Shown here: positions 14,428 through 39,329 of the stretch, in pieces | Numbering within the stretch: position 1 is the stretch's first letter | Layout of the letters: each line of letters starts with the position of its first letter | Assembly: GCF_001194135.2 (NCBI RefSeq) | Contig: NC_069005.1 | Coordinates: 902,194 to 966,193, forward strand | Direction: 5' to 3' | DNA from: Octopus bimaculoides | Lineage: Eukaryota | Length of the DNA: 64,000 nucleotides | Notes under the pieces: generated by a model | Told to the model about the DNA's origin: nothing | The model's database searches: none | Seen by the model: the letters and a program-made list of their open reading frames with translations, nothing else | Program-made: the position numbers and the translations under genes

Positions 14428-14647
14428 CCAATGCCACTAAATGCCCTTCCTAATGCCAACCACTTTACAACATGTACTGGGTGCTTTTTTTTTTTTGTGG
14501 CACTAGCACTTGTGAAGTCACTGTGCAACTTGCTGGACTATAAACCCTGTTGGGAGTAGTTTTACACAAGGAGATGGGTTAAAGTATGAGTGAAGGGGCC
14601 AGTGCCGACAGAGGAGCAGCATGAAACATAAAGAGGTTGGGTGGTAA

Positions 14648-16625: not shown

Positions 16626-18634
16626 TATATATATATATATGTGTATTTAAAGAAAGGTGAAAATAAAACTTTAATACAAAAGCAGAGAATAAATTGAAAG
16701 CTCCATACAAAAATGAGGCTATTCAGAGAATATTGCTCAAATGGTTTTGTCTTCCTGTTGACGTATCCATTGAGTGTAGCAACTGAAGATTATGCTGCAG
16801 CGCATCAATGATGTATTATTCGTTTCTGTTGTCATTGATAACATTTCATCTGCCATATTTACTTAGGATGTTGAGTGATGGAAGCTTTCAGCTATTGTCG
16901 GCTAATTTTATTTTTAATGTAATGCATTGTTGAGGTGCGCTATAATAATTACAAGCCTTTAATTGCTTTTAGTATTTCAAGGTTGGTTTGTTCATTGTCT
17001 CATTCTTATCATTATCATCATTATTATTATCATCATTATTATTATTATTATTATTATTATTAATAGTAGTAGTATTATTGTTGTTATTCATGTTTCAAGA
17101 CATATCACTGTTCTATCATTTATTTAGCTATATCGTCCTCGCTGCTTGCACTTTCATGTCTTATCTTTTACTTGTTTCAGTAATTGTGCTGTGGCCATGC
17201 TGGTACACCAAATTGAAGTCGGATATTTTTAGTCAAACAAATTAACCCCCGTTACTTATTCTATCAGTCTCTTTTACCAAACATCTAAGTTACAAGAATG
17301 TAGACAAACTTACATCAATTATCAAATAGTGGTGGGGAAGCGCAAACACAGGTGTAAAGACACATACACATATCATGATCATCATCATCATCATCATTGT
17401 TTTAATATCCACATTCATATGCTTGCATGGGTCAGAGAATTTGTTGAGATAGCTTTTGCACCAGTAATTGTAAAAAAATATTTCAAGATAACCAATTCAT
17501 AATCCACCTAAGGCTAGGATTTTTTAAAAAATATACCTTGACCTAATTGAAGGTCTAGTATTCCCAATTTGAACTTTAAACCTAGAGTGAGGATAGGGTC
17601 AACCTCATAGCTGTTTTTATAGCCATTTCAGGTTTCCAAATCTTCCTCTCACATTCTTTGCACTCAAAAACTATAGTAACCAAACAATAATATGATACTA
17701 GCCAAACCTACACAAACTTAGTTCACTTCAAACCACATCAGTGGATGGACCTTTACTGAAATTGCATAGACTAATTAATTAACCAGTTGAAAGTAATTGG
17801 ATGCAAATGCAATTGCTTCTTGTCTATGCAGCAGAAACGTGTGTCGGACAAATTTAAACCAAATCGTCATTGTTATCATTATCGTTTAACATTTGCTTTC
17901 CAATTAAAAAGCTAAAAATTAAAAATAAGCAGACGTACTCATCTCCATAATTGTCATATATATATATAACGGGCATATTTCAGTCTCCATCTGCCAAATT
18001 CACTCCCAAGGCATTGGTTGGCTCTGATTCAGAGTAGAAAATACTTGCCCAGGTGCCATGCTTTGGGGCTAAACCTAAAACCTCCTGGTCACAAAGCTAG
18101 CTCCTTAACCACACTGCCATCATCAGTGTCTCTCTATCTGAACTATTGTTGATGTAAATTTGTCTGTTTTATTGTTTGTTGTTATTGTTGTTTAGCCCTG
18201 GGTCAAACTCTAATCAAGCAAAACCATAATCAAAGCCTTTCCTACCCTTGATGTCTTCTCTTTTTAAGTGTATCTATCCCTTTACTTATTTAAGATGATA
18301 CAGAGACTTGGTTGCTATTTTTAACAGGTCAAGTACTAGTTAGAGGCTTCTCCACTGTATTATTATGCTACTAATTGTTCAAGTCCTTTTTAGTTTTAAC
18401 TTATAAATAAATATTCGTTGTTATGTCTCTCACGTAATTTACTGAAAACATCACCTCTTGCTTTATTTTAAACACCAAATGTTTCTTTTCAAATTGTCCT
18501 ATTAACATGCATCATTGTCAAATATCTGACCTTTTCAAAGCTAGTTTTACACTTCATAACTATCTTGATATGTTGGTCACATCCTGACTATTTGCTGCAG
18601 ACTACATTCACTGAAATATATGCAAAATACATTA

Positions 18635-18691
<57 letters not shown>

Positions 18692-20639
18692 NNNNNNNNN
18701 NNNNNNNNNNNNNNNNNNNNNNNNNNNNNNNNNNNNNNNNNNNNNNNNNNNNNNNNNNNNNNNNNNNNNNNNNNNNNNNNNNNNNNNNNNNNNNNNNNNN
18801 NNNNNNNNNNNNNNNNNNNNNNNNNNNNNNNNNNNNNNNNNNNNNNNNNNNNNNNNNNNNNNNNNNNNNNNNNNNNNNNNNNNNNNNNNNNNNNNNNNNN
18901 NNNNNNNNNNNNNNNNNNNNNNNNNNNNNNNNNNNNNNNNNNNNNNNNNNNNNNNNNNNNNNNNNNNNNNNNNNNNNNNNNNNNNNNNNNNNNNNNNNNN
19001 NNNNNNNNNNNNNNNNNNNNNNNNNNNATCTATCATCTCATCTTCCTGCACAACATATATAATCGTTCACAATATCTTTAAAAATCCACTTAGAAATAAT
19101 TATTTCTTGCAAAACATTTTCAGTTTCAAAAGATAAGTAAAATAAAATGAAAATATCCTCCAATTTTTACATTTAGTTTCGTTTCAGATAAAAATCATTA
19201 GATTTTCAAATTTTGTTCCATGTTAGAAAAAAATCGTAATTTGTTTTACCCAAATAGGAAAAATTCAAACACCTTGTTCAGTTTTTTTTTAAAAATTTTT
19301 CTTCAGTTTCATATTTCAAAACTAATAAGACAGAGGATGAATCAGAAATACTTAAAAAATGTTAACTAAAATTTTAATTTGAACTAAAATTCAATAAAAC
19401 TCAAAATTCACATTTGATTCAATGAAAAATTCCAGGTTTTCTACTTTTATTAAATTCTAATTTACCACAAATTTCTCAAAAATGCATCGTATGTTTATGA
19501 AAATATGAATTTAAAAAAAACTAAAAATCCATATAATTTGATCTAAATTCCCTCCTAGTTTTGGTTTTTAACCATTTTGAGATTGTTAAAACAAGCAGCT
19601 GTAGAATAACTGCAAAAGTTCATTCAACTACTCGTGTAGTTTTAATCTTAAAGGTTTATCATCATCACTGTTTTAATGTCCACTTTCCATGCTTACATGG
19701 ATGAGACACGAGTTTATTGGGGCAAATATTCTACAGTGGGATGCTCTTCCTGTTGTCCACCCTCCCTTATTTCTAAGTAAGGTAATATTTCCTCTTGGCT
19801 ACATATGTTTCCATTGCTTGTATGAAAGTGACAGTCATTTACTTTACAACTATTACGTGGTGTCAAGACAAGGAGACATAAACGCACACAAACTCACTCT
19901 CATACTCACAATATATACATACAAAGATCTATCTATCAATCTATCCACATACACACACATACATACATGCACCTATTTATAAACACACACACACATATAT
20001 GTATATATGTATATATACAATCACACACACACACACACTCACACACACACACAATGGGTTTCTTTCCCTTTCTGCTGACCAAATTCATTCATAAGGCTTT
20101 GATCTGCCTGGTGTTATAATAGAAGACACCTGTCCAAGGTGCCATGCAACAGGACTGAACTCAAAACCAAGCAGTTGAGAAGCAGACCTCTTAACAACCC
20201 AACCATTCAGTCGTCTCTTTTCAATCATAACCAGTTGGAAGAATTTATCACTCACCAAAAAAAAAAAAAAAAAGACCTGTGATTTTTAACAAATGGAGAG
20301 AATATAACTTAATATAACTTAATATTTTCATCTTCAAAATAACTATCAGATGGTTTGCTGGTGTATCAAGTATATGATGTGATAATATTTCACCACCTTT
20401 AAGTTGAGAAAACAGTACAATTTAAAAAAATTCTCAGTTTCTTGAAAGAGTCACTAAAAATTGTTACAATTTCTTTTTGTTTTCTCTCTACAGTAAATTT
20501 CAATTCACAAAGAACTTGTTTTCACACATCATTCGATGTATCAATATCTCTGATTTACAAATTCATAGCAAGAGGTAGTTGTACAACTCCATAAGCAAAC
20601 AGTAATAACCAGTTGTTGAGACTTAGGAGTGGTCACCCA

Positions 20640-21260
20640 AAATAGTGATTGAAGATATACTGACAGGCTTATATAATGTTCAGATAATTACATGCCACTT
20701 ATGAGCCCCATTTGACTCATATCATCTCCTACACTCCCTGTTTTAGTTCTAATTATTTCATGAGCTGACTCACATAATTTCTGAAAATAACTTTTAATCT
20801 ATTCAGTCAGATTTTGATGTTGTAATAAAAACTCAACCCTAATAGCAACAACAATTTCTTTTGGGGCTTTTGGTGATAAATGAAAGACATTATCACTGAT
20901 CTTGTGCTCCTAAAATTCATTTCTTCAATTTTCAGGGCCTCACCATAATAGAAACTTTTCAGATGGCCATTGTACATGGTTTTGATAAAGACAAACTCCT
21001 TTATGTGGTTTTTATTGTTAGTATTCAAAAGTAATTTTGTCTTTCTTTCTTGTTAAAGCTAGGGAGTATCACTGTCAAGTTTCTATGATACCTGGGTCAT
21101 CGAGTGGAAGTTTGTTGTTATCAACAGTGTCATTGTGGTTTTGTACTGAGTTTATCCAAGTAAATCTGTTGGCAAACACAATTCTTTATGTCCAGAAGCT
21201 TTATTTAACTGAATAGCCAAGCTCCTTGACTTCAAACTGGCAACCTTCTTACATAATAGC
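20640..21260 (-). mobile_element. Highly degenerate coding relic, possibly RTE-type LINE endonuclease region
   Basis: Interrupted frames QYKTT..LLITTNF, RSTRSV, ISDNVF and YFQKLCESAHEIIRTKT are loosely collinear with the RTE APE region as I remember it. Many stops. Confidence 0.25.
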
Positions 21261-21879
21261 AATCGTGTATAAGCATGTAAAACACATGCAGCATTGCAAT
21301 AATATTAGCAGAGCTATAATATATTAATTGGACAGTGAGTAAAAACTGGAGCAGATATTTCAAGAAGGGGGGGGGGGAAACAGGTGAATGAAATATGAAC
21401 GGATGATACAAGAACTTAAAAACTAAAACAAAAAAATGGGACAAATGAATTAGATATAATTAGGGCTAGATTAATTAGTTACAATATAATTGATAAATCA
21501 GGAGGATTTGTATATTTATTTTGTTTTCCATTTGAATTACACATTACAAAAATATTCGAATTAGTCTCCTTCATCGAATATTGTCAGTGTTGCAGGTTTT
21601 CTCTCAGTTTCCCTCTCCTAGACAGATGTGATAACAACAGAGGAGCCTTCCAAATAACAACAGAGGATACTTCCAAATCCACTCACAAATCTTTGATTGA
21701 CCTGAGATTATAGTAGAAGACACTTGCCCTAGATGCCACATAGTGAGACTGAACCTGAGACCATGTAGCTGTGTGTGTTCAGTAGAGGAGTCTGGTGGTT
21801 TGGGTCAGTACTTGAACATTAACATTATCCTTTAGGATGTTAACGAAAAATAGGATAAGTAATTTTTTAAAATAATGGT

Positions 21880-22090
21880 TTCACACTTTGTCACAGGGCC
21901 AGCAATTTGGAGGAGAGTGTAAGTTGATTACATCAACCACAGTACTTGACTGGTCCTTAATCTATCGACGCAAAAAGGATGAAAGGCAAAGTCAACCTTG
22001 GTAGAATTTGAGTTCAGAAAGCAAAGACAGACAAAATGCTGCTAAGTGGTTTTGTCAGGCAGGCTAATGGTTCTGCCAGTTTGCCATCTT
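21880..22090 (-). mobile_element. SINE family A copy
   Basis: aaggatgaaaggcaaagtcaaccttggtagaatttgagttcag..ctgccagtttgcc. Confidence 0.78.
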
Positions 22091-22919
22091 CAATTTTATA
22101 AAATAATAATTAAATATAGATTTTCTTTATAATTTTAACATTTTCTCTTTGGTGTTTATTTGATAATTGTTCTTGTTATTTTCTTTTTTTTTTATAATGG
22201 CTGAAAATATAAACACCCGAAATAATTCAACACTATAGACTTCTTTTTGCTTTCATATTGGCACTTCTCTTTCTGAAATTTGCAATAATTGAAGAAAGAC
22301 ATCTACTGTAGTAAATATTTTGGGATATAATGGGATTGTCCCTTTCGGTAGGTTTTGGTTCCTATATTATGTAGTATCTGAAAATTGAAACCAAAATTAA
22401 TTTATTTATGAAAGGAAACACAAATTTATAATAAGTTTATGGGAATGCATTGATTTCAAATTATTATCTATGGCCTTTGCCTCAGTCTGCTTGTATGTCA
22501 AGTAGGCTCCACTTTTTATGATTTAGCTATTAATAAGAGAAAGGGTGTCCAGCTATAAATCAACTGTTCCATCCATATGCCAATTTGGAAAACTACTCCA
22601 TCAATGCAAGAATGTGGAATAACTGAACTCCAAGCACCTCTGCCCTTCCCATTCCTACCCATCTCAGACCTCTCTGACATCCACCCTAACACCTTATCAC
22701 CAATGTCATTATCCCTTTCCAGCTACACCACCCACACACTCACTTCTAAACTGTAAGGTAGTCACATAGCTATATGACTAAAGCAAGAAACCTCTTCTGT
22801 TCTGGCTCTTTTCCCTTTTATTTTGCCCCCCCCCCCCGTCTCTCATTTGTTTTCCTTCACCTACATACAGCTATGTTATTTTTCATATCTGTAGTCTCTC
22901 TGATTTATCTCATTTTGAC

Positions 22920-23085
22920 GGGAAATACAGAGAATTTGGAATTACTATAATAAAGCTGATATTATACCAACAAGAGACTAGGAACAATGGCAAAAATATT
23001 TGAAGGTTGGTTGAAGATATTGGGTATTGAGGAAATTTGTTTGTTTGGCACAGCAAGAACCATTAAGAAAAACACTACATTTGTG
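22920..23085 (+). mobile_element. Degenerate R4/Dong-like RLE C-terminal fragment
   Basis: Reads EIQRIWNYYNKADIIP, then after a frameshift GTMAKIFEGWLKILGIEEICLFGTARTIKK. Confidence 0.55.
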
Positions 23086-24443
23086 GGATGTAGCCCAATA
23101 TTTATCTATCCCATTCCAACTGGACAACAACGAGATGCTTAGTGAAAAATTAAAAAACATAAAGGATAATAATAATATTTATAATTGTGTGGTCCTGGAT
23201 GGGTTCAGCAGTGTGGATGAAACCTTCAGATCAGTGGCCATTTATGCTCTGATTGGGGGAGAGCAGTAGAGCAGCCAGTCATCTTCAGCAGTTTAGAAGC
23301 ATTATGGATTCTACTAATTCGTGTTAATAGGCTATTGGAAGGGCATCTTGGACACACACTCTGATTATGTAGGAGTAACTGATAATATCAAATACAGTTT
23401 CATTCAAGTGTAATAATTGAATTAGACTATCAGACTCCCTATGTCTAAATTTTTAACAGATTATTACTAGTCCTTACAGAATGATTTTTACATTGCTAAA
23501 TTTATATTTTTTGTCTTATTATAAGTGCAGCCATTTGTATAACTTAGTCCCTATTTTTTATTGTTTTTATTTATTTTTTGTTTGGTGCTGCAATTTTCTG
23601 TATGTATGAAAAGGTAATCAAATTAAGATTGAACTCTCACACCATTATTTTACACAAACTTCTAAGCTCATCCTTTAAACCAGTGATTCTCAACCAGCAG
23701 TGCTGGGCCATGGATCACTTCATACTGAGCCAAATAGAAAGAAGAAGCTTTAAATTTTATCTTTATTTTATTGGTTATGAAAGTCTGCAGGAAGTTTTTG
23801 CATTTTATATGTATTACATATATAATAATTAAATTATATATTATTGTGTTTTGTTGTGCATGTGATCCCCCACCGCACCCCTAAGTCCCTAGAGAAAGTC
23901 TGTGATGCCAAAAACGCTGAGGATCAGTGCTTTGAGTCATAGTTTCACAGCACGTTTCTACCCACTGGGCTGTAAACCCAAGCAAGAGCAATTTTGTATC
24001 AATTTAGGTTAGATTTAAAGCTAACGTTTGCAACCAGGGAAAATCTTTCATAACTATTTGTTCATATTTATCTCAGAATATATATTTCCACACTGATATA
24101 AGTATTTTGGGTTGCCTAAAGTAACTTGCGTTGTTTCGTTTTGAACTCTAACTACCATATTTAAATTCATTTTCAGTCATGGAATCCATATTTAACCAAA
24201 CTTAGTATCAGGAATATCACTTATTACTCGTTTACTGAGATACAATATTTGTTTTCTGTGATTTCTACTCTGGTTCTCTCAACAATTTCAACTCATGGTG
24301 TCACAGGATTTCTACTTTCGTATCAAAATATTTCTTCTGCCATTCATAACTTTGGTGTTTCCTCTTCAATTAGATTTTTTTTCAGTGTTCTATGATTCCA
24401 GTTTCTTTGTAAACCTTATCAAGTTGTGAGATAGTCATTTGGT

Positions 24444-24477
<34 letters not shown>

Positions 24478-25799
24478 GGATGACACAAATTCATGAAGCA
24501 TTTCATATTTCACTGATGGTGCCCCAGCATGGTCACAGCCTTTGGGCTGAAATGCATTAAAAGAATAAAAGAATATCCCAAGTAGGTTTGACTCTAATGA
24601 GACATATGTGTGAACTGCTGCTACCCAACATTGTTCTGATGTTATGTAATACAAGTTTGCGAGTTCACTTCAAGCCATTTTTTTTTTTTCAATAGCGTAG
24701 CCATAGATGGAAGGCTGAGGTCAATGACTCTTTTATCAAAGCCCCTGTAACCAATGGGAGGAAGAAGGAGTAAATTTATCCTCAAACGTCTGTCTGAGTC
24801 TGGATGCTTACAACAGACCAGACTTCAGTAAAGGCACAAAGGCAACAGATTAACTCTGCCTTCCAAGAACAGGATTAGTGCTTCCAACAGATTTGCACAC
24901 AGCTTCCAAATTTCAGTTCCAGGATTTTTTAGTCATTTGAAAATACAATAGAGGACATTTGTCCAATATGGCATACTGAGATCAAACCCAAAGTCAAGTA
25001 GTTATAAGTTACTTTCCTTAAAAGACGGCCATGCCTGTACACACCTGGACTTTGCTTTATTTGTTTATGTATTCCAGTCCAAAAGCTATGGCCATGCTGG
25101 GGCACATAGTATTTATTATTGGAAATATAGTACCTGATAATGGATGATTAGGAATTTGTTCAATGCAAACCAGACAAAAAGGAGTTTGGAAAGTCATTTC
25201 GTCAGTGAAATACTACCATTATCTCTTATCTTTTCTACGTCTATAAAAGATCTACTGACCTCATTCTGGTCATTTGGTGTCATGCCACAGTCTTCTTATC
25301 TGCCAAAAATAAATAAAAATTAAAACAAATTAAAGTTTTTTATAAAAAATCATTGGTCAATGCTCACCAAGAACTTAGTTGCAGAACCCTAGATCGATAT
25401 ACCAGTATTTGAAAGTGTAACACCTTTGGGTTATAGTGTTGATGTTAGTGGTGGTGGTGGTGGTAAGATTGATATTGTTATTACTACAGTACTTGGGATA
25501 GCTCCAGTCAACTCTTCTTAAGAGGACCCATGGTATTTGACCATTTGACCATCTTATAGCCACCTCATTTCTAATGTAGAGCTCACTGGTCAAAGACGTT
25601 GCTCCTGAAACATGATTCTAGTTTCGAGGCAGTGACAAATTTTCCGATGGAGATTTGGTTACTATTTTGAGCATGTCCAGCAACTATATAGAATCTCCTT
25701 CATTGGCTGTGGCTGGTGGTGATGGTGGTGGTGGTGATTGGGGGTGGGGTGATTATGATGATGAAGTTGATGGTGGAGATGGTGGTGGCAGTGAGGGGA

Positions 25800-25810
25800 T
25801 TAATTTTTAA
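25800..25810 (-). CDS. Possible terminal coding exon of the nested gene (adds V-K-N-stop)
   Basis: Strong minus-strand acceptor tttgtctttggaatttttgtctatttgacag. A phase-1 join to the donor at 26229 gives GTT AAA AAT TAA. Confidence 0.35.
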
Positions 25811-26211
25811 CTGTCAAATAGACAAAAATTCCAAAGACAAATAATACGCAACCTCACAGTACAGTCATGTAAGCACAAGTAACAGTGCATTCTGGGTAGC
25901 TGAGGATTGTGGGTGGTCACTGGAGCACATTTTTACAGCCACCTCATGTTATTACACATCAATCTGTGATATGTGTAACATGGTTCACAATCAAATATAC
26001 TGTGTCATCTAAAATCAGTGATGAATGAATCAGTGATAAACGAGACCACATGTATTTGTTTTATTAATTCCAGAAAGATGACAGGTAAAATCAATCCAGA
26101 TGACATTTGAACTGAAATATTTAAAGAGATTTATCTACATAATCACATACGTTTTGTCAAGCACTTCCCAAAATCTTTCATCTTATATAACCATCACCAG
26201 ATTATATAGCT

Positions 26212-27009
26212 TTAACATGTATACCTACCTCTAGCACAGCATCTGTAGAATTTAGACAGTCTTGTAACTGGTTTGGATTTCTTCTCTGGTGGTTTAGAAA
26301 TGGGCATATTTGCAAGCTTGTCAAAGGTAGTATCGTATTTTTTGGAACTTAGGAAAATGACTGGTCGATATTCTTCCAGTTGTTTATCCTTTCGTGAGTG
26401 CTGTTCAAAATGATCAATGTATTCAACTGCCATGTTTTCTATAAGTACACAAGGTACCCTTGGAATATTGAAGGTTATTAATTCCTTTTGATCTGGCCTC
26501 CGAAGGGCAAAAGGCTCATGTAACACTGGTCCAATTTCAAGGCTTAAAGGTTGTGCAAGTGGGAGGTGTAACATAATCTCCTGCTGTGCACTCAAAAGTC
26601 TAGCTCGTGGTTCACTTTGTTGATAAAAATACCTCTTCTTTATGACCCCACTTTTCCCTTCAGCTGTTGTTATCATCTTGCTTTCACTTGCCACAAACTC
26701 TCCAGGTTTCACTATTGATATGTTATAACTTATTTCTTCTTTGGGGGCAAGACTTTTGCCATTAGAAGGATTTTGTTGGCAGAATTTACTTCTGGTAATT
26801 GTTTTTTCCTTTAGTATGTCACTTTCCATCATATTTCTAAACTGTTGAGTACAAATATATGTAACTGTCTGATCTGGTTGAATTTCTCTGTCTAACGGCC
26901 TATTCTGTTGATAATAAATTCCCTTTCTTTCTTCATTTATTTCAACAGCTTTTGTTGCATTCTGATAGATGACATCAAGGGATATCTCAGATTCATATAT
27001 GTCATCCAT
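26212..27009 (-). CDS. Uncharacterised 265-aa protein; candidate nested antisense gene inside intron 8499-43057
   Basis: 798-nt open frame MDDIYESEISLDV...KFYRCCARGRYTC* with non-repetitive composition in very AT-rich DNA. A minus-strand acceptor (T)13gatag lies 4 nt before the ATG (exon start 27013). A possible donor AGAG|gtaggt follows 26229. Confidence 0.72.
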   Translation of the reverse strand: MDDIYESEISLDVIYQNATKAVEINEERKGIYYQQNRPLDREIQPDQTVTYICTQQFRNMMESDILKEKTITRSKFCQQNPSNGKSLAPKEEISYNISIVKPGEFVASESKMITTAEGKSGVIKKRYFYQQSEPRARLLSAQQEIMLHLPLAQPLSLEIGPVLHEPFALRRPDQKELITFNIPRVPCVLIENMAVEYIDHFEQHSRKDKQLEEYRPVIFLSSKKYDTTFDKLANMPISKPPEKKSKPVTRLSKFYRCCARGRYTC

Positions 27010-28412
27010 TTTACTATCAAAAAAAAAAAAATCACAATAATGAATATTGTAGAAGAAAAATTCTACTTGGTAATCCCAAAATATGAATTTGTTTGCATTA
27101 AAAAATAGATATGAACACCACTTTAAACAAAGCCAGATTTTATTTATGATGTCATAATGTAAGTTTTGAAAACTTCTTTTCATCATTTCCACAATGCAGA
27201 GAATCATCACATTAGTTGTCCTTTATTTTACTTCATAAAATAATTCTCTGCATTTGTCCACTTTACAAATAATAAAAATATTCTTACAACACCAGTCACC
27301 TTGTTGACAAATTTGTTTTTCACTTCAGCTATTCATTTGTATCTTCTTCATAGTCATCAACTCCTTTATTAGTATTATTCTTCCATTATCTCAGCTCATG
27401 CTATTGGCAGTAATTCCACATGCATTAGCTAAGTCAGTAATCCAATATAACTTCTAAAAGAGAATAGTGCATTGGTAACAATAAATGCACAATGTATTTG
27501 CTTATTAGTTTAAGGTGCATTTTTCCATGCTGTCATGGGTTAGATGAGGAATTATTATGAGACAAGATATTATAGCTAAGATGCTCTTCTTGTCAACAGG
27601 GCTTTCTGTTTTCTCAAGAAAAGGGTTATTCTTATTGCAGAGGTTTTTCAAAAGCACAGGGACTGGATGTAATATCAGCAAGGTATGTCAGTATCACCAA
27701 GTGGTCAGAAGTGTGGAATATTCGAAACACAAATTATTCACACATGAATGTATGGATCATCAGCAGCAACTGAACATGTTTTTATGGAAGTTGTCAAGTA
27801 AATCACAACCCTCTTTCACCAGATATTTACTTCTGTTAGCTCTTGGGTTTTTCTATGAAGCTGATATGGGCAACCTTCTTTGAGAAGCAGGTTGCATGAG
27901 ACTTGGCTTGTCATCAAATAAGCTACACTACTAAAAAAATCCATGGTAATTTTATAAGTGTGCCATTCAGAAAATCCTGCAGGTCACATGCACCCCATGG
28001 GTCACAGTTTGCTCATGAATGCTATAAAGCTTGAGAATGACTTTTATAAAGTCTCTCTCATTCACATTGGGAATTTCTTTCATATCGTGTCTCCCACCAG
28101 TCATATACCTTCATACTATTTAAAGTTTTTAGCAATTACTATCCAATATGTACTTTCATATCTGTGACAGGGCAGTGTTCATGTTTATGTGTGAATAATA
28201 TGATCAACATATAATATTTATATACACCTGACACACAGATAAGGGTAACGAACTGTAGAAATCATGACATCTCACATTAAATAAATGAGTACATGAACCA
28301 TTAACGTGTCATCAGCGTTAGTGATGGAGAAAAGAAGCCAGTAGATGTCTGCCAATATTGATTAAGGAAAAAAACAGTATTTGTTGTTTGCATTCCATAC
28401 AATATTATCTAC

Positions 28413-29290
28413 AGTCTATTGACATTTGATAAAGTAATATTTGTAGTTTATTGATGTTCAATGAAATAGTATCTATGATTTATTGATGTTTAATAAAATA
28501 GAGCATTGTAAACTATTGCTGTTCAGTAAAATAGTGTGTCTTCTATTGATGTTCAGTAAAATATATCTGTGATCTATTGATGTTCAAATAATATTACTGA
28601 TCTATTGTTTTTCTATAAAATAGTACCCCTATCCTATTGGTGTTCAGTAATATAGTATCTGTAATCTATTGATGTTCGTTAAAGTAGCATGTGTAGTCTA
28701 TTGATGTTGAAAGAGTATTTCTGGTCTATTGATGTTCAATGAAATAATATCAGTTGTCTATTGGTGTTCAATAGAATAGTATCTGCCATCTATTGATCTT
28801 TTATCTTTTGCTTGTTCCAGTCTTCAGACTGCGACCATGCTGGGGCACCACCTTCAACAGTTTAGTCTAACAAATTAACCCCAGAATTTATTTATTTTTT
28901 TTAAAACTTGGCACTTATTCTATTGGCCTCTTTTTGTCAGACTGCTAAGTTACAGAGGCATAAACAAACCAACACCAGTTGTCAAGCAATGGTGCACAAC
29001 AAAGACAAGCCACTTACACAGTCACACACACACACACGATAGGATTCTTTCAGGTTCCATCTACCAAATCCACTCACGAGGTTGTGGTCAGCCCACGCCT
29101 ATATAGAAGACACTTGCCTGAGATGTTGTACAGTGGGACTGAACCCAGAACCATGTGGTTTGGAAGTAGAATTCTTACCATACAACCACATCTGAACCTA
29201 TAAAATAGCCTCTGTCATATATTGATGCTTAATAAGATAATATCTATAGTCTATTGGTGTTCAATAAAATAATATCTGTCATATACTGGT
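28413..29290. repeat. ~32-bp minisatellite (ctattgatgttcaataaaatagtatctgtgat-like) interrupted by a SINE
   Basis: About 12 degenerate units before 28799 and 2-3 more after 29199. Confidence 0.8.
28799..29199 (-). mobile_element. SINE family B (head, internal CA microsatellite, tail), inserted in a minisatellite
   Basis: gactgcgaccatgctggggcacc..ctaagttac..gtcaagc..(ca)n..ccaaatccactcac..agaagacacttgcc..gggactgaacc. Confidence 0.8.
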
Positions 29291-30167
29291 ATTGATTCCA
29301 TTAACTATAAATGGTTGGCATCCATTCAATAATTAAAATAGCTTTTAACTATAATATATAACGGAATAATTTCTTTGTGATTCTTTCTTTGTAATGGTAA
29401 TTCTGTTAAATCTATTTTACATATTTGATGATGTTTCACTCGTATTTATATAATTTATATTGCATTGTTATTATTATTATTGTTGTTGCTGTTGTTGTTG
29501 GCTAGCATCAGGTCAGTCCTAGCCCTGTCGGCCTATGGTTAAAAGTATTCCATTGTTGCCCAATCGTTTCATTTCATCTATAATGTGACGAGGTTAACAT
29601 TATTCAACATGTCTTATCCTCTTTCAAGACCTTAGAGTGTGTTATAAGAGGGAATAGTCTTCTATTTCTAGCAGGAAGAGTGATAACTGAGACATTTCTT
29701 TGTGTGTCTGATGGTGGAGGTGATGGCGGTAATGGTAACAGCAGAAGTGGTGGTGGTAGTGGTGGTGGTGCTTTGCTAGAGCACATAGTGGAGTTGGAAA
29801 AATCTATATTCTCTGAGAACAATAATGGTGTGTGTAATTAGCTAATTACTACCAGGAAGGAATTATATTGTCCCTCACACCCACTACAATATAAACCCTA
29901 CTATTTATTGCTTACTTGCCATTTGTTTCTTATTCCAAAATGAAGGAAAACTGATTAGTTAGGAAAGAAAATAAGAAATCAACATTTATTTTTTACATAT
30001 CTTTAAATTGTTTCAGCTTCAAAACTGCAGTCATACTGGGGCACCACCATTATATTGATAGTGTTAAAAAAACTTCATGTATGCATGAATAATAATCTCA
30101 ATGGATGTCTGAGCGTAAAGGGGTCACACAAGTCAGTCAATGATTTATTGAATAAAGCCATACATAC

Positions 30168-30540
30168 GTGGCTGTGTGGTTAAGTTTGCTTCCCAACCAT
30201 GTGGTTTTGGGTTCAGTGTCTTCTACTATAGCCCTGGGAGGACAAAATCTTTGTGAGTGGATTTGAAAGATGGAAACTAAGAGAAGCCTCCTGTCATGCA
30301 TGCATGCATACATGTGTGCATGCATGCATGTGTACCCTTGCCTTGACAATGTGTGGTGATTGTAAACAAGCATCACTTTTGTACCAGTGATGTTCTTTGT
30401 ATCCAGTCTGGCCATGGGAGGAAAATATTACCTGGCTTGGAAACAGGTGAGGGTTGAAGACAGAAAAGGCATTCAGTCATGGAGAATCTGCCTCAACAAA
30501 TTCCATCTGACTCTTGCAAGCATGGAAAAATAAATGATAA
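30168..30540 (+). mobile_element. SINE family B head composite
   Basis: gtggctgtgtggttaagtttgcttcccaaccatgtgg..gtgagtggatttgaaagatggaaact; body homologous to 14800-15030. Confidence 0.7.
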
Positions 30541-32477
30541 AGTGTGGTTGGTGGCAGCAGATTTTTTAGGGATGATACATAATCAATTGAATTGACTCTA
30601 GCACATGTCCAGTACTTATATTCACAAGCATGAAATTAAAAATTGATTCCAGGCTAATTAGATCTCAGAATGTCCAGGGATAGAACAACTTCCTCTCATT
30701 ACCCTGTTTTCTCCAAACTCCAGATGAAACACCCATTAATTTTAAAATGCTTTCACTACATACAGATGTGAACTAAATCTCCAGTTATACGAACTGTGTG
30801 AGATTATGTGCCTTCACCATGACTTTACAGCACAACAACAGGGAGGAAATATCAATCACTAATTGTTTCATCAGATAGGTTTACCTCCTACTGATTTTGT
30901 CACCTGCCATACCACACCAAGATTATTAATTCTCTTAGGTAAGCCATAAGCATCAGATCACATAATTTCATTTCTCTCTTTCCCACCAACTACCTCTCAC
31001 CTTGTGCATCTCAATACATCAATATACCAAGTGTTTGATTTAGCAAAGCAGTTATGTAATGCACATAGTCTTATTTCCTCCACCTCCAAGGAATCTATGA
31101 CCTTATGTTACAAAAAAATCAATATCAAAATGTCATGATTACCAATTAAACACTTTCCACTTCACTTCCATCATTATCAATATTGAGCAAGGCATGAACA
31201 TTATTCAATCTTCTTTCCCCTTCTCTTATAAGCCTGGAACGTTTTTCTAAAAGAGATCAATACATAACTTATTCTTTTTCTTCTTCTTCTTCAATTTTCC
31301 CCCATTTTACCTCTATTCTCGACCTTTCTCTTGAGCAATGTAGATCTAATGTAAGACTTTCCATGGCAATCCTCTTGTATGGAAAACTATGTTGTCTACT
31401 TTACAGAATCTGGTTGATTCTGTTCTATTCTGGTAACTGCATAATGGTAATAATTTTCATAAATTATGAATGCTTAAGTGAATGATTATACATAGAATAT
31501 GTAATATTTTTAGAGTCACCATTCACTTTGTAACTCATGAATATTACCTTTTTTTTTTTACTTCTTACTTACACTAAACAAGTGAGAGCTGGTGACAGGA
31601 ACAATATCTGGGCAAAGAAGATCTGCCTCAACAACAAATGACTGTATGGATCCATCTGACCCATGCAGGCATGGGAAAGTGGATGTTAAAATGACATACA
31701 TATATATATATATACATATATATATACATACATATATATATATATATACACAGACGTGTGTGTGTGTATCTCTCTATGTGTTTATGTATGTATGTATAAA
31801 TGTCTACACATACCTACATACATTTTCTCACCGTCTATATATCATCATGTTTCAGGTCGTCTGCACTTCTCCAGTAACTGTTGACATTTCTCGAAACGTG
31901 ACTGTCATACTCTTCCTACAAAATCATTGCTCAAGGTTGTTAGGTATGCTTAACAGATATATTTATTGCTTACAGAGGTACACACTTTTTCGTGGAATGT
32001 CTATAAATAACAATTGTACTGCTTTTGTATTATTTCTCTATCACTTTGACATTATCATAATATCATTGTGAAGCAAACTTTCATCTGAGCAATGTTTTAA
32101 ATTAGACAGCCGTATTTTAAGTAATGAATCTATCACTTATGTCGGTAGTCTCAAATATAATGTACTCTAATAATTAGGAGCTATTATTAAAAATACTTAA
32201 ATAACTTGAGTTAGACTTCTTACGATATTATAGTTTTTACAGCTTAATAATACGTTGTTATTTTTTTTAATAATGGGCATTTTCCCCCTGGTACGAGACT
32301 TTCTATTAATTCTAGTCACATTTATTTTTTTTATTTTTTGTTCTTTTTTGCATGTGGCCCTTAAATTATATATTTATTATTTAATATTTTACGAATTTAG
32401 TCTCCAATTAGAAACTAATAAACTAACATCTGCTGGTTTTAAAACATGTTTCTACAAGTGTCGCCCACTTTGTATAC

Positions 32478-32814
32478 TCTTCTTACTTGTTTCAGTTTTT
32501 TTACTGCGGCCATGCTGGAGCACCGCCTTTAGTTGAGCAAATCAACCCCAGGACTTATTCTTTGTAAGCCTAGTACTTATTCTACCAGTCTCTTTTGCTG
32601 AACCACTAAGTTATGGGGACATAAACACACCAGCATTGGTTGTCAAGCGATGTTGAGGGGACAAGCACGGACACACAAACATATGCACACACATACATAT
32701 ACATATATATATATATATGACAAGCTTCTTTCAGTTTCCGTCCACCAAACCCACTCACAAGGCTTTGGTCAGCCCAAGACTATAGTAGAAGACACTTGCC
32801 CAAGGTGCCACGCA
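32478..32814 (-). mobile_element. SINE family B copy (left member of an inverted pair)
   Basis: ctgcggccatgctggagcaccgcctttagttgagc..gacacttgcccaaggtgccacgc; relatively intact. Confidence 0.85.
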
Positions 32815-32924
32815 CAAATATTTGTGTATACATGCGTATATATATGTACACACACCTTACATATAGTAAACTGGTGGTCAAAGGTTCAAATCCCCTTGGT
32901 GGGGTCTTGGTTTTTATATGGTCA

Positions 32925-33390
32925 GGCATGGCTGTATGGTAGGAAGCTTACTTCCTCACCACATGGCTTTGGGTCCAGTCCCACAGAGTGGCACCTTGGG
33001 CAAGTGTTTTCTACAATAGTTCTGGGCTGACCAAAGACTCCTGGGTGGATTTGGTTGGCAGAAACTGGAAGATGCCAACTGTATATGTGTGTGTGTGTGT
33101 GTGTGTATATACATGCATGTGTGTGTTTGAATATGTGTATGTATACGTGTGTGTATGTATCTATGCAAGTGTGTTTGTGTTTGTGTTTGTCCTCCACCTG
33201 TTGACTGGTTTTGGTTTGTTTATGTCCTCTTAACTGTGTGGTGTGGCAAAATATGCTGATAGATTAAGTACCAGACTAGAAAAATGAGTTCTGGGGTCAA
33301 TCTGTTCAACGAAACTCTTCAATGCAGTGCCCCAGTATGGCCACAGTGCAATGTAAAAGATAGAAGACAAAAGGTGCGGAGGAATGGATA
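32925..33390 (+). mobile_element. SINE family B copy (right member of an inverted pair)
   Basis: gtggcaccttgggcaagtg..ggatttggttggcagaaactg..(tg)n..cagtgccccagtatggccacag. Confidence 0.8.
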
Positions 33391-33718
33391 TGTTTGTATG
33401 TCTGTGACACCATGTTTGTGTTTATGTCGACACAGGTGTTGTTTATGTTGTCTGTTTGTATCCTGTCACTTAGCAGTTCAATAAATATGAATTGATGAAA
33501 TATACACCAGACTGAAGAAAATGACTGGGAGCAATATAATTGACAAAGGTCCTTGAAGATATGCCCCAGCATGGTCACAGCCCAATCACTAAAACCAGTG
33601 AAAATATAAGAGAGTAAAGGAGTAAATGTATTGTAGTAGTTGTAGTGGTGCCAGTAGCAGTAGTAGTAGTAGTAGCACTACTACTACTACTATTACTACT
33701 ACTACTACTATCACCAGC

Positions 33719-33758
<40 letters not shown>

Positions 33759-33840
33759 GTATATTTGGGATACAGCTCTTGATTGAAACATGTCTAGTTA
33801 TTAAAATAGTTCAACCTCTTCCCCGGCTGTGTTTAAAATC

Positions 33841-33881
<41 letters not shown>

Positions 33882-34098
33882 NNNNNNNNNNNNNNNNNNN
33901 NNNNNNNNNNNNNNNNNNNNNNNNNNNNNNNNNNNNNNNNNNNNNNNNNNNNNNNNNNNNNNNNNNNNNNNNNNNNNNNNNNNNNNNNNNNNNNNNNNNN
34001 NNNNNNNNNNNNNNNNNNNNNNNNNNNNNNNNNNNNNNNNNNNNNNNNNNNNNNNNNNNNNNNNNNNNNNNNNNNNNNNNNNNNNNNNNNNNNNNNNN

Positions 34099-34134
<36 letters not shown>

Positions 34135-34454
34135 ATGGCATTCACTCCATCCTACAGATATACATCTACTGCGAAATAATGTAGTCGGAGAGATGAAATT
34201 CCCTCGTTCCTGACAAAAGGTGAATCGAATTTCCACTTAGCTGAAAAACCTGAACATCTTCCTCTCTGACCTCACCCCCCCCCACATCCCTCATCAGCCA
34301 ATTCCATTTCTATACTTTGCAGCTGTGCTATGAAGGAATAACCATTACCAAGTTGATAACATGGCAGCCAGATGCAGGATTTCCCTGTCTGCTATTACAC
34401 AACACAGCAATTCTATTAATGCAGTGATGGGGGCTTCCCCCACCAATGACATAT

Positions 34455-34502
<48 letters not shown>

Positions 34503-36230
34503 TCTCCCTCTTTCTCTCTCTCTCTCTCTCTTCCTCTCCCTCTTTCTTTCTCTCTCCCTCTTTCTTTCTCTCTCCCCTTCTCTCTCTATCCAACACACTG
34601 GCTTATTGATTTTAACACTGCTTTCAGATTCAGTTACCAGTTACAGTAATGTCTCTCCATACATTTCAGTAGGCAAGACAAGGTGGAAAATAAAATTTTA
34701 AAAAATGCAAGATTCACTCAGGTCTCTCCAGTAGTGCCTCTGATGTTCAGCAGCAGAACCAAAATATTGCATTATATTTATGGTTCAGTGCCAAATATAA
34801 CCTGTCTTTTGTAAATAATATTTCATTATTTGCTTGATACTAAACCCTTTTCATTTATTGATATTTATTGATTAACACTTCTGGTTATTACATTCACTTT
34901 AGTTTAAACCCTTTGTCTCGTTTTATTTTCAGTATATATTAAAATAACAACAACAACATTAATTGTAATAATAATGTTGATTGTTAATAAAGAAGTAATT
35001 ATGAGCTTATTGTATATAATGCTCAGGTGTGTTACAACTCATCAGAAAAGGGTAAAAAAGGGGACAGAAAAGCACAATAAGTCAAAGAAAGCAAGGCAAG
35101 AATGATAGTCAAAAAGTATGAGCTTAGTATACAAGATAAAGTATAAGGAGACAGAAAAGTGAAGAGTAAAAGAGTCAAAAGGAGGGGGGAGTGTTTAGGT
35201 ATGTCAAGAATAGTGTTGCTGGTTTTTAGAAAAATATGGAATTTTCTTTTGACTGATCAGTGTCTTGGCAGCTAATAATTGATGCAGGTAGTTTTATTTC
35301 CTCCTTTGACAATTCTGAACATTCTGAAAAAATATTTCCAAAAGTCATGGAATCCGAGCTGTTTTTTTTTATTATTATTATTCTATATTTGTGTCCATGG
35401 TTAGTAGAGATATTGAATTAAAATAGTTTTGTTGGAAAGATGGTGGATAATCTTGTGGGCTTTTACCAAGCTAACTACTAGACATCAAAGATTTAATTAC
35501 CTCTCTTTCTAATTATTTAATTATTTATCCATTAAGTTAGCTAATCAATTATTTATGAAGTGAAAAAAAGCTGACATTGAGATACACTAGTGTGCTGTAA
35601 AGAGAAGAAAAATGTAATATTTTGGCAATGAAAATTGATTTCTTTATGAAATGCCATATTCATTCTTCCTTCACTCAACAACTTCCAATACAGACCATGA
35701 AATTTGAATTTCAATCATTATATTTGGCTATTACCTGTTTATACACCAAGCTAACTACCAACTTATTTAGTAAGCTATCTGATTACTTCCCTAACTACAT
35801 ACATTTCTATATACTGAACCATGTATGACCATCTTTTTATATAGCAAGATAATTAACTAGCTTGTTACACAAACACCAAACTATCTTACTTTCTTTCTGT
35901 ATGCTAAGCTGTCTACTTATATAATATATATGTATATATATCATCATCATCTCCATCATTATTTAACGTCTATCTTCCATTCATGCATGGGTAGGACAGT
36001 TGACAGGAGCCAGCCAGGTAGAAAACTACCCTAGGCTACTGTGTCTGTTTTGGCAGGGTTTTTTTTTTTAACAGCTGGATGCTCTTCCTAACACCAACCA
36101 CTCTGCAGGGTGGACTCAGTGCTTTTTATGTGGCACTAGCAAAATGTGAGGTTAGTTTTGGCAAGATTTCCCGTTCCTGCCATTCGCCAGGGAAGTGGCG
36201 GAAGGAATGGGAACTCCTCCTCACAAATAT

Positions 36231-36278
<48 letters not shown>

Positions 36279-36795
36279 ATATAATAAGCACTTNNNNNNN
36301 NNNNNNNNNNNNNNNNNNNNNNNNNNNNNNNNNNNNNNNNNNNNNNNNNNNNNNNNNNNNNNNNNNNNNNTGTGTGTGTGTGTGTGCATGCAAGTGTATA
36401 TGTATGTATATATATGTATATCTATATATAAATGTGTATTTGTATATATATATATATATTTCTTCCAGTCTATTTGCCAGATTAATTCTTGCTTTGCAGA
36501 GCACATGATCAAGTTGCATGTGTCATTTGTTTGTGTAACATTTTGTTTTGTGAAGATAGTTTACTAATTCAGTAGCCAATCCTTTCCCAGGTGAAGGTCA
36601 GTTTTCCCATGTGAAAAGCCGGGCTCAGTATCATGAGCCAATAGAATGCTTGTCAGTCGTTTACAGTGCTGCCTCTGTATAAAACAGTCAGCAATACCAT
36701 AGTGTCCACATAGAATTGGGTGGAGTTGTTTGTTGATAGTTTGAGAACAATAACAATAAAGAAACAGCAACAATAACCATATACGTACTTGCATT

Positions 36796-36847
<52 letters not shown>

Positions 36848-36899
36848 TATATGTGTGTGCATATATCAAAAGAGACAACTTGAACCTGGTGCAGCTCTC

Positions 36900-37350
36900 T
36901 TCAGTTTGTTTGTTTGTTTTGGTTTGGTTTCTATGGTTGGATGCCCTTCCTAATGCCAATCACACCACAGAATGTACTGGATGTTTTGCATGTGTCACCG
37001 GCTGATGTATATTTTACATATCACTGTCATGGGGGCATATTGCGTGTCACTGGCATGAGTGCTCTTTATGTGTCACCAGCACGGATGCCTATTACATGTC
37101 ACTGGGCCAGGTGCCTTTTTACATAGAATGCGATCAGCACAGGTGCCTCTCACATGTCACCAGCATGGACACTTTCCATGTGCCACTGGCACTGGCCACG
37201 ACTATGAATGATTTCCCTTAGCTTGACGTGTCTTTTCAAGCAGAGCAAATCGCCAAAAGCCTCAGTCACTTGTCATTGCTTCCACGAGACTCAACATCTC
37301 AAGATCATACTTCACTACCTCATCCTACATCTTCCTGACGGACACGTCAC
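36900..37350 (-). mobile_element. Family C RTE-like LINE 3' fragment including the end of the ORF
   Basis: Minus strand reads *DEVVKYDLEMLSLVEAMTSD*GFWRFALLEKTRQAK (RTE C-terminus-like), then the 3' UTR motif ggatgcccttcctaatgcc. Confidence 0.65.
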
Positions 37351-38034
37351 TTCAGTTCCTCTTATTGTAGGAAATAGATACCAAGCTTATCCACAAAACT
37401 TCCATCGGACTTGAAGGCTACCCAAGAGAATATTTTTCTTCCATGAAATTTAATGCTGCAGTAACCACTGTTTCTAAGGAGATCATGATTTATGAACAGG
37501 ATTACGCTAGCATGATTATATGCCAGGAGTAATCTGCATGAAATGGTTAATAGCGAGAATAATCAATTTAAATTGTTGTCACCAAAGTTGAACAGCAGAT
37601 AGAAATTAATAAGTGAAGCAGTTTGTCTGCCTTGTGTAATACTAAAACTTAATTGTAAAATGCTGAGTTTGAATCTCGTTAAAGTGACAAGTAATTAGCA
37701 TAAATCAAGGACACTGTTGTGAGAGAGGGAGGTGGCGGTGGTGGTGGTGAGGACTTAACACTAACAATTCAATAAGCTGTGATTCTTTATCACTGAACAT
37801 TCAACAATTACGCTATGTTCACCTATAATGGCTGAATTTGAATAGAAGTTGATAGCTGAAGCCCACAATTTCTTCAGTTCACTGGGGATGCCACCCACCC
37901 CACACCGTCAAGCACTTGTGCATGAATTCTTTTGGAATCTTTCTTCACAGCTTAACCTGTTTTACCATTCCTCTCTGTATTCTTATCCCTCCTAGCTATG
38001 AATTATATTTTGTGATTTTTTATTATTATTTCCT

Positions 38035-38402: not shown

Positions 38403-38419
38403 TATATATATATATATAC

Positions 38420-38452
<33 letters not shown>

Positions 38453-39162: not shown

Positions 39163-39329
<167 letters not shown>

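What the first reader, a model, noticed from the sequence alone, without database searches (positions are those of the whole stretch)
26212..27013. Candidate nested antisense orphan gene inside a 34.6-kb intron
Seen: a 265-codon minus-strand ORF with ordinary, non-microsatellite amino-acid composition. It is the longest non-repetitive ORF in the window, and a textbook acceptor (T13-gatag) lies 4 nt upstream of its ATG, so it looks like a spliced coding exon with a 5' UTR exon further right. I recognise no domain or transposon motif. Inference: a lineage-restricted gene transcribed opposite to its ankyrin host, with possible transcriptional interference or tissue-exclusive expression.
Basis: partly seen in the sequence, partly recalled or inferred. 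Interest (0 to 1): 0.78.

Follow-up and report, generated by a model that had tools for sequence, protein, structure and literature searches.

The report
Annotated octopus orphan gene in intron
The open reading frame is real and is already annotated in public databases as an uncharacterised, octopus-only gene (LOC106871379) lying backwards inside an intron of an ankyrin-repeat gene; its frame is kept open by selection, but its amino-acid sequence drifts almost freely and its function is unknown.

Summary
There is a minus-strand ATG at 27009 and a stop at 26212 (265 codons). A T13 tract plus AG ends 4 nt before the ATG, and an AG|GTAGGT donor lies at 26229/26228. The window is Octopus bimaculoides chromosome CM046625.1, and the ORF is RefSeq model XP_014773287.1 (LOC106871379). 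That model splices 26229 to 25299 and ends in DKKTVA*. NCBI annotates it on the opposite strand inside a 1192-aa ankyrin-repeat gene, and I confirmed the host intron as 8499-43057 (34,559 nt). Orthologues exist in O. sinensis, O. vulgaris and one unidentified octopod. All four keep the start codon, both splice sites of the internal intron and the DKKT[VA]A* tail. There is no Pfam, PDB, viral or transposon match and no paralogue. A profile search of 1.84 billion proteins found no true relative. dN/dS is 0.75-0.87, and divergence (9.9%) is no lower than in the surrounding intron (mean 7.0%). Even so, staying stop-free in three lineages has neutral probability of about 3e-4. Indels are about tenfold depleted and all in frame, and replacements are more conservative than random. 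Best reading: a real, weakly constrained, taxon-restricted protein-coding gene. It is ordinary in kind and already annotated.

The parts
26229..27009 (-). CDS part of the main coding exon (codons 1-260 plus the first base of codon 261) of LOC106871379
   Evidence: 99% identical to XP_014773287.1. The frame is open, with only in-frame indels, in O. vulgaris, O. sinensis and the unidentified Logan octopod.
27010..27031 (-). Acceptor-like signal: T13 (27031-27019), GATAG with AG at 27015-27014, then 4 nt (TAAA, 27013-27010) before the ATG
   Evidence: TTTGATAG is invariant in four species, while the pyrimidine tract is interrupted in the others. Its use in vivo was not tested.
26223..26228 (-). 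Donor GTAGGT of the internal intron (exon ends at 26229)
   Evidence: AG|GTARGT is conserved in four species, and this donor is required to produce the RefSeq C-terminus.
26212..26228 (-). Read-through tail of the unspliced ORF (…GRYTC*). It is intronic in the RefSeq model.
   Evidence: the window ORF ends RCCARGRYTC*, whereas the RefSeq protein ends RCCARDKKTVA.
25300..26228 (-). Internal intron of the nested gene (929 nt, GT…AG)
   Evidence: the gene span is 1730 nt in the annotation, and the acceptor TTTTTGGCAG| ends at 25300.
25280..25299 (-). Second CDS exon segment: AT AAG AAG ACT GTG GCA TGA, completing D261 and giving KKTVA*
   Evidence: unique pattern match. The acceptor and the DKKT[VA]A* tail are conserved in four species.
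25056..25061 (-). Candidate polyadenylation signal AATAAA, about 220 nt after the stop
   Evidence: conserved in all four species. A second AATAAA at 25117 is not conserved. Its use as a poly(A) signal is inferred only.
8499..43057 (+). Host intron (34,559 nt, phase 1) of the ankyrin-repeat gene that contains the nested gene
   Evidence: flanking exons 8370-8498 and 43058-43212; the host gene spans the locus on the opposite strand.

Best explanation
This is a genuine, taxon-restricted (so far Octopus/Octopodidae only) protein-coding gene, LOC106871379. It lies antisense inside a 34.6-kb intron of an ankyrin-repeat gene.

Shown:
- It has one large coding exon (ATG 27009 to 26229), a 929-nt GT-AG intron, and a short final coding segment (25299-25280).
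- These give a 266-aa, 31-kDa, hydrophilic, basic (pI 8.8) protein with no signal peptide, no transmembrane segment and no recognisable domain or confident fold.
- Selection keeps the reading frame open and full length, and disfavours radical replacements.
- Individual residues are otherwise barely constrained: dN/dS is about 0.8 and the substitution rate is at or above that of the surrounding intron.

Inferred:
- It is transcribed from its own minus-strand promoter, possibly with a 5' UTR exon spliced to the acceptor at 27014.
- It is translated into a largely disordered protein whose length, composition and a few short conserved blocks matter more than a fold. Those blocks are IYYQQ.RPLDR.IQP, KKRYFYQ.SE.R.RLLSAQ.EIML, LSLEIGPVL.EPF, RRPDQKELI and the C-terminal RCCA[RK]DKKT[VA]A.
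- Like most such young or fast-evolving genes, it probably has narrow, tissue-restricted expression.

Whether it arose de novo or diverged beyond recognition is open.
For: - **Chance.** The ORF is far longer than chance allows in this window.
- **Public models.** It is identical to RefSeq XP_014773287.1, with orthologous models in O. sinensis (XP_036369160.1) and O. vulgaris (CAI9741066.1), plus an intact ORF in an unidentified octopod genomic contig.
- **Conserved signals.** The start codon, donor, exon-2 acceptor and DKKT[VA]A* tail are conserved in all four species. The in-frame sequence upstream of the ATG is broken by a 1-nt indel in O. vulgaris and O. sinensis, so ATG 27009 is the conserved start.
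- **No stops.** In a neutral simulation with the observed branch substitutions (26, 51, 99) and the flank mutation spectrum, all three lineages stayed stop-free in 0.035% of runs. The product of the per-branch rates is 2e-4.
- **Indels.** The ORF shows one in-frame event per comparison (9 nt and 6 nt), against 4-13 events per kb of mixed lengths in the flanks.
- **Replacements.** Amino-acid replacements are more conservative than random mutation predicts. Mean BLOSUM62 is 0.14 versus -0.44±0.21 (P=0.003) on the longest branch, with the same direction on the other two (P=0.06 and 0.18).
- **Copy number.** It is single copy: no paralogue in the window and only its own cluster in 5.8 billion and 1.84 billion protein sets.
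Against: - dN/dS is 0.75-0.87 and not significantly below 1. Differences are spread evenly over the three codon positions and along the protein, and synonymous and nonsynonymous counts match the neutral simulation.
- ORF divergence between O. bimaculoides and O. vulgaris is 9.9%, against a 7.0% intron mean, so there is no sequence conservation above background.
- No transcript, ribosome-profiling or peptide evidence could be examined here.
- The AlphaFold2 model is unreliable (mean pLDDT 37) and Foldseek found nothing.
- The O. vulgaris annotation uses a different 3' mini-exon (VGMG*), so the 3' structure is not agreed by all annotators.
- Orthologues were found through protein databases, which favours intact copies.
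Confidence: 0.7

Rival explanations
1. The locus is transcribed and spliced, but the protein is not what is selected. Either the RNA or the act of antisense transcription is the functional product, or the locus is a nearly neutral proto-gene. Because the stop codon lies in the last exon, any premature stop in the big exon would lie more than 50 nt upstream of the 26229/25299 junction and would trigger nonsense-mediated decay. The ORF would then be kept open to protect the transcript rather than to make a useful protein.
For: - dN/dS is about 0.8 with an even spread of changes, and synonymous and nonsynonymous counts equal the neutral expectation.
- The substitution rate is no lower than in the intron.
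- There is no fold or domain.
- The stop codon sits 20 nt past the last junction, which is the geometry this idea needs.
- The NMD rule itself comes from general knowledge and was not tested here.
Against: - Replacements are biased towards conservative residues, which an RNA-only function does not predict.
- In-frame indels would be tolerated under both models, so they do not discriminate.
- A 265-336-codon ORF is unlikely to pre-exist in 35% GC non-coding DNA.
- There is no Rfam or structural RNA signal.
Confidence: 0.17
2. The ORF is a non-functional leftover or an annotation artefact. On this reading it is a chance or decaying ORF that gene predictors call only because it is long, and it has simply not yet been hit by a stop in the few species sampled.
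For: - The sequence evolves at a neutral-like rate.
- Genome-wide, roughly 0.5-30 chance intervals of 336 to 265 codons could be expected in a 2.7-Gb genome of this composition.
- Orthologues were ascertained through protein databases.
Against: - The joint probability of no stops in three lineages is about 3e-4, and the indel depletion is about tenfold with all events in frame.
- Sequence immediately upstream of the ATG does carry a 1-nt indel, so the locus is not generally protected from indels.
- Splice sites and the 6-codon tail in a separate exon are conserved in four species.
- Broken fragments from other species would also have been found by the protein searches, and none was.
Confidence: 0.09
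3. The ORF derives from a transposable element or an endogenous virus, either domesticated or decaying.
For: SINE-like fragments lie in inverted orientation on both sides of the gene (24517-24552 and 28815-28850). Octopus introns are repeat-rich.
Against: - There is no multicopy signal: 3 hits in 5.8 billion proteins, all orthologues, and no paralogue in the window.
- There is no Pfam hit, so no transposase, reverse-transcriptase or integrase domain was detected.
- There is no relative in IMG/VR viral contigs.
- The flanking SINE-like pieces are short, common repeats rather than terminal repeats of one element.
- The gene has a spliced two-exon structure.
Confidence: 0.03

Closest known systems
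RefSeq LOC106871379 (XP_014773287.1, Octopus bimaculoides), with orthologues LOC118767891 (XP_036369160.1, O. sinensis) and CAI9741066.1 (O. vulgaris)
   Same: It is the same gene. Identity is 99% over the whole ORF, and the donor and second coding exon are identical. O. vulgaris is 80% identical at the protein level, and O. sinensis has the same two-exon CDS and the same nesting in an Ank gene.
   Different: All public names are 'uncharacterized' or 'hypothetical', and no paper in the searchable library mentions any of the accessions.
Nested antisense intronic genes of animals (textbook cases recalled from memory: Pcp inside Drosophila Gart; EVI2A/EVI2B/OMG inside human NF1 intron 27b; F8A inside F8 intron 22)
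   Same: A complete, independently spliced gene lies on the opposite strand within one large intron of a host gene.
   Different: Those examples encode proteins with known families or functions. This one has no detectable relatives. Any regulatory coupling with the host is untested.
Taxonomically restricted / orphan genes, including de novo genes and genes diverged beyond recognition (concepts as in PMC7660931 and PMC4888513)
   Same: - No homologue outside a narrow clade.
- A short protein that is poorly predicted structurally.
- dN/dS close to 1 with the ORF nevertheless maintained.
   Different: The origin is unresolved. At about 20% amino-acid divergence for about 7% intronic divergence, homology would fade quickly, so homology-detection failure is as plausible as de novo birth. 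No outgroup non-coding orthologous sequence could be examined.
Bacterial DUF11/CARDB-like giant repeat proteins (P0005, P0006), the only non-octopus 'hits' of the profile search
   Same: A roughly 35-residue stretch (aa 88-122, EEISYNISIVKPGEFV…) weakly resembles the repeat motif.
   Different: This is an artefact. Per-repeat scores are 0.3-9 bits with independent E-values of 7e4-7e8. The whole-protein E-values only arise by summing 13-29 near-identical repeats. It is not homology.

Membership tests
Protein-coding gene (as opposed to non-coding sequence) | ORF longer than composition allows | tested here: met
   the expected number per window is 8e-4 for 265 codons or more and 1e-5 for 336 or more. 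The ORF exceeds all 150 simulated windows.
Protein-coding gene (as opposed to non-coding sequence) | Reading frame preserved across species (no stops, and indels only in multiples of three) | tested here: met
   neutral P is about 3e-4 for remaining stop-free. There is one in-frame indel per comparison, against 4-13 events per kb in the flanks.
Protein-coding gene (as opposed to non-coding sequence) | Purifying selection on amino acids (dN/dS clearly below 1, third-position excess) | tested here: not met
   dN/dS is 0.75-0.87, codon positions are about equally hit, and synonymous and nonsynonymous counts equal the neutral expectation. The only constraint signal is that replacements are more conservative than random (P=0.003 on one branch).
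Protein-coding gene (as opposed to non-coding sequence) | Conserved canonical splice sites that give a consistent product | tested here: met
   the donor, the exon-2 acceptor and the DKKT[VA]A* tail are conserved in four species.
Protein-coding gene (as opposed to non-coding sequence) | Transcription and translation observed | not testable with these tools
   No RNA-seq, Ribo-seq or proteomics access was available. The Logan contigs L002 and L004 end in repeats and are collinear with the genome, so they look genomic. RefSeq models normally need transcript support; that is recalled from knowledge of the NCBI pipeline and was not checked here.
Nested antisense intronic gene | The whole gene lies inside one intron of a host gene, on the opposite strand | tested here: met
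   NCBI gene spans; host exons 8370-8498 and 43058-43212; the nested CDS lies at 25280-27009 on the minus strand. The O. vulgaris annotation splits the host differently.
Orphan / taxonomically restricted gene | No detectable homologue outside a narrow clade | tested here: met
   - word-indexed search of 5.8 billion proteins.
- full HMM search of 1.84 billion representatives, returning only artefacts.
- Pfam, PDB sequences, viral contigs and Foldseek.
- Limit: unannotated cephalopod genomes could not be searched by tblastn.
De novo gene | The orthologous region in outgroups is demonstrably non-coding | not testable with these tools
   No outgroup cephalopod genome sequence is reachable. The genome collections offered are bacterial/archaeal, viral or metagenomic.
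Transposon or viral ORF | Multicopy, and/or carrying transposase, reverse-transcriptase, integrase or capsid domains, and/or bounded by terminal repeats | tested here: not met
   single copy, no domain, no bounding TIR or LTR, and no viral relative.

The most novel reading that the evidence does not exclude
The gene was born de novo from intronic sequence of the ankyrin host within the octopod lineage. It is now maintained only for being translated at full length: frame and length are selected, while residues are nearly free. The product would be either a disordered protein or an ORF that shields a functional antisense transcript from nonsense-mediated decay. That would make it a clean, datable example of early-stage gene birth in a cephalopod.
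Probability: 0.2. Interest if true: 0.5.

Novelty: already known. Interest (0 to 1): 0.22.

Why it matters
As a genome feature it is ordinary. Nested antisense genes and uncharacterised lineage-restricted genes are common in animal genomes, and this one is already in RefSeq for two octopus species and in the O. vulgaris annotation.

Its modest interest is evolutionary. The frame is clearly kept open, yet amino-acid changes accumulate at roughly the neutral rate. That combination marks it as a candidate young or fast-evolving gene. Cephalopod-specific genes are thought to contribute to cephalopod novelties, so it might be worth a look in expression atlases. Nothing here points to a new mechanism or a new class of element.

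Tried and rejected
1. **Remote homology.** Pfam at E≤1, a PDB sequence profile at E≤10, a full HMM scan of 1.84 billion representatives and IMG/VR viral contigs found nothing real. The two bacterial giant-repeat hits were dissected and rejected as summed-repeat artefacts.
2. **Structure.** AlphaFold2 on the 4-sequence alignment gave mean pLDDT 37. Foldseek against the PDB gave no match at E≤0.001 and TM≤0.18. Both are uninformative.
3. **'Faster than neutral' evolution.**
   - The ORF is 1.8 times more diverged than its immediate flanks (P=7e-5) and 1.4 times the intron mean (P=0.004).
   - However, 13% of equal-sized intron windows are at least as diverged.
   - I therefore do not claim positive selection.
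4. **Longer N-terminus.** The frame is open for about 70 codons upstream in O. bimaculoides and the Logan octopod, but it is frameshifted in O. vulgaris and O. sinensis. Rejected.
5. **Internal repeat (YYQQ… / YFYQQ…).** The self-alignment score was 44, against a shuffle mean of 30±5 and a shuffle maximum of 47. Not significant.
6. **Transcript evidence from Logan contigs.** The two contigs are identical, end in repeats and are collinear with the genome, so they are probably genomic. Exact look-ups of the unspliced 265-aa and 331-aa products found nothing.
7. **Retrieving the host protein.** A search with one exon peptide returned only a 67-aa fragment, so that search was wasted.
8. **Literature.** No paper mentions the accessions. 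The SRR number of the Logan sample could not be tied to a species.
9. **Rfam on the whole window.** No hits.

Full report
**Observation.** The minus strand carries an ORF from ATG 27009 to a stop at 26212, which is 265 codons. The stop-to-stop interval is 336 codons. A run of 13 T (27031-27019) followed by GATAG places an AG at 27015-27014, 4 nt before the ATG. A consensus donor AG|GTAGGT ends the putative exon at 26229. It is the longest ORF in the window that is not an N-gap or a microsatellite. With the window's empirical stop density, an interval this long is expected 1e-5 to 8e-4 times per window, and none of 150 simulated windows reached it.

**Identity.**
- A protein search returned three hits only: XP_014773287.1 'uncharacterized protein LOC106871379 [Octopus bimaculoides]' (99%, 266 aa), a hypothetical protein of O. 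vulgaris (80%), and an unnamed ORF from a Logan assembly (71%).
- Cluster look-up added XP_036369160.1, LOC118767891 of O. sinensis.
- The window therefore comes from O. bimaculoides chromosome CM046625.1, at around 0.92-0.94 Mb.
- The RefSeq protein differs from the raw ORF only at the C-terminus (…RCCARDKKTVA versus …RCCARGRYTC*).
- In both NCBI annotations the gene lies on the strand opposite to, and wholly within, an ankyrin-repeat gene (1192 aa and 1168 aa products).
- I confirmed the host intron directly. Exons 8370-8498 and 43058-43212 have canonical sites, and joined they give an uninterrupted ankyrin repeat (Ank_2, E 1.3e-16). The intron is 8499-43057, or 34,559 nt.
- The O. vulgaris annotation cuts the host differently and gives the nested gene another 3' mini-exon.

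**Is it a transposon, a virus, or a member of any family?** No.
- Pfam gave nothing at E≤1, and PDB sequences gave nothing at E≤10.
- IMG/VR viral contigs gave nothing.
- There is no second copy in the window, at either the DNA or the protein level.
- No terminal repeats bound it, although short SINE-like fragments and a 32-nt minisatellite lie nearby.
- A full HMM scan of 1.84 billion representative proteins returned only its own cluster and two bacterial giant repeat proteins. Those two are artefacts: each repeat scores 0.3-9 bits, with independent E-values of 7e4 to 7e8. The whole-protein E-values arise only from summing 13-29 near-identical repeats.
- AlphaFold2 gave mean pLDDT 37, and Foldseek gave no match at E≤0.001.
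- The protein is 31 kDa, hydrophilic (GRAVY -0.65) and basic (pI 8.8). It has no hydrophobic segment, and its internal repeat is not significant.

**Evolution.** I aligned the gene and its flanks from O. bimaculoides, O. vulgaris, O. sinensis and the Logan octopod. The Logan contigs look genomic: they end in repeats and are collinear with the window.

*Substitutions look neutral.*
- dN/dS is 0.83, 0.75 and 0.87 for the three pairs, and differences are spread evenly over the codon positions.
- Differences are spread evenly over eight blocks of the protein (chi-square P=0.26).
- Synonymous and nonsynonymous counts equal those of a neutral simulation.
- ORF divergence between O. bimaculoides and O. 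vulgaris is 9.9%. The immediate flanks are at 5.4%, and about 14.7 kb of host intron averages 7.0%.
- Since 13% of equal-sized intron windows are at least as diverged, I do not claim accelerated evolution. I claim only that there is no conservation above background.

*The frame, by contrast, is protected.*
- With the observed branch substitutions (26, 51 and 99) and the flank mutation spectrum, all three lineages remain stop-free in only 0.035% of simulations.
- The ORF shows a single in-frame indel per comparison (9 nt and 6 nt), while the flanks carry 4-13 indel events per kb of arbitrary length.
- Sequence just upstream of the ATG has a 1-nt indel in O. vulgaris and O. sinensis that closes the upstream frame. 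The conserved start is therefore ATG 27009.

*Replacements are milder than random.* Mean BLOSUM62 is 0.14 versus -0.44±0.21 (P=0.003) on the longest branch. The other two branches go the same way (P=0.06 and 0.18).

*Gene signals are conserved.* TTTGATAG before the ATG, the donor AG|GTARGT, the exon-2 acceptor and the DKKT[VA]A* tail are conserved in all four species. An AATAAA about 220 nt after the stop is conserved as well.

**Interpretation.**
- The most economical reading is a real, translated, taxon-restricted gene whose product tolerates most substitutions but not truncation. This is typical of young or rapidly evolving, largely disordered proteins (confidence about 0.7).
- The main rival is that the transcript, or antisense transcription through the host intron, is what matters. 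The ORF would then be kept open because a premature stop upstream of the last exon junction would trigger nonsense-mediated decay. This fits dN/dS≈1 and the gene geometry. It does not predict the conservative bias of replacements, nor the existence of so long an ORF in AT-rich DNA (about 0.17).
- A neutral relic or annotation artefact (about 0.09) is hard to square with the frame-preservation statistics and the conserved two-exon product.
- A transposon or viral origin (about 0.03) has no support.
- Whether the gene arose de novo or diverged beyond recognition cannot be decided. At about 20% protein divergence for about 7% intronic divergence, homology-detection failure (the concept in PMC7660931) is entirely plausible.

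The donor prediction was exact. The 5' UTR exon, use of the acceptor, and transcriptional interference or tissue exclusivity remain untested.

**Novelty and interest.** The gene is already annotated, as uncharacterised, in RefSeq for two species and in the O. vulgaris annotation. No paper in the searchable library mentions it. Nested antisense genes and orphan genes are well-known kinds. Interest is low (0.22). The only mildly notable point is the contrast between a protected frame and near-neutral residue evolution. That contrast makes it a reasonable candidate for studies of gene birth in cephalopods once transcript, translation and outgroup data are examined.

Noticed in passing
window 8370-8498 (+), 43058-43212 (+), about 44250-44470 (+): These are ankyrin-repeat exons of the host gene. 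The first two join in phase 1 to give a continuous Ank_2 match (E 1.3e-16), and the third also matches Ank_2 (E 6.8e-9).
   Followed up: partly
window 49959-50636 (+) and 57958-58695 (+): Two long plus-strand ORFs (225 and 245 aa), rich in N/T/S/P low-complexity sequence. They are probably large 3' exons of the host gene. There is no Pfam match above threshold.
   Followed up: partly
window 28379-28800 and 29203-29293: A minisatellite of about 32-nt units (…TCTATTGATGTTCAATAAAATAGTA…), 1.4-2.3 kb on the 5' side of the nested gene. It is also present in O. vulgaris.
   Followed up: no
window 24517-24560, 25064-25105, 28815-28850: Short SINE-like fragments (GGTGCCCCAGCATGGYCAC…) in inverted orientation. 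One pair brackets the nested gene at a distance of 4.3 kb, and another lies within its putative 3' UTR region. They look like common octopus repeats rather than the termini of one element.
   Followed up: partly
window about 23106-23135 (-): This is the equivalent of the alternative last mini-exon used by the O. vulgaris model (CAG|TT GGA ATG GGA TAG, giving VGMG*). It is present in O. bimaculoides too, so an alternative 3' isoform is possible. The O. vulgaris annotation also ends an Ank gene model near window position 22981.
   Followed up: partly
window 27010-27222 (-): The frame stays open for about 70 codons upstream of the ATG in both O. bimaculoides and the Logan octopod, and this stretch is at least as conserved as the ORF. 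It is frameshifted by 1 nt in O. vulgaris and O. sinensis. It is probably a T-rich non-coding sequence that happens to lack stops.
   Followed up: yes
window 61910-62785 (-) and 63008-63448 (+): Long ORFs made of tandem VRSFVRTY-like units. These are tandem-repeat DNA translated in frame, not genes.
   Followed up: no
window 14037-63660 (14 runs, 2732 N in total; e.g. 18692-19027, 39330-39985, 41071-41451, 55726-56189): Assembly gaps, mostly next to microsatellites. They create several spurious long 'ORFs' filled with X.
   Followed up: no
L002 and L004 (Logan SRR11869385 and SRR11869394): An unidentified octopod, about 13.5% diverged from O. bimaculoides in intron sequence, carries the intact orthologue. 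The two contigs are identical over 1297 nt and both start at the same repeat boundary. The species could not be determined.
   Followed up: partly
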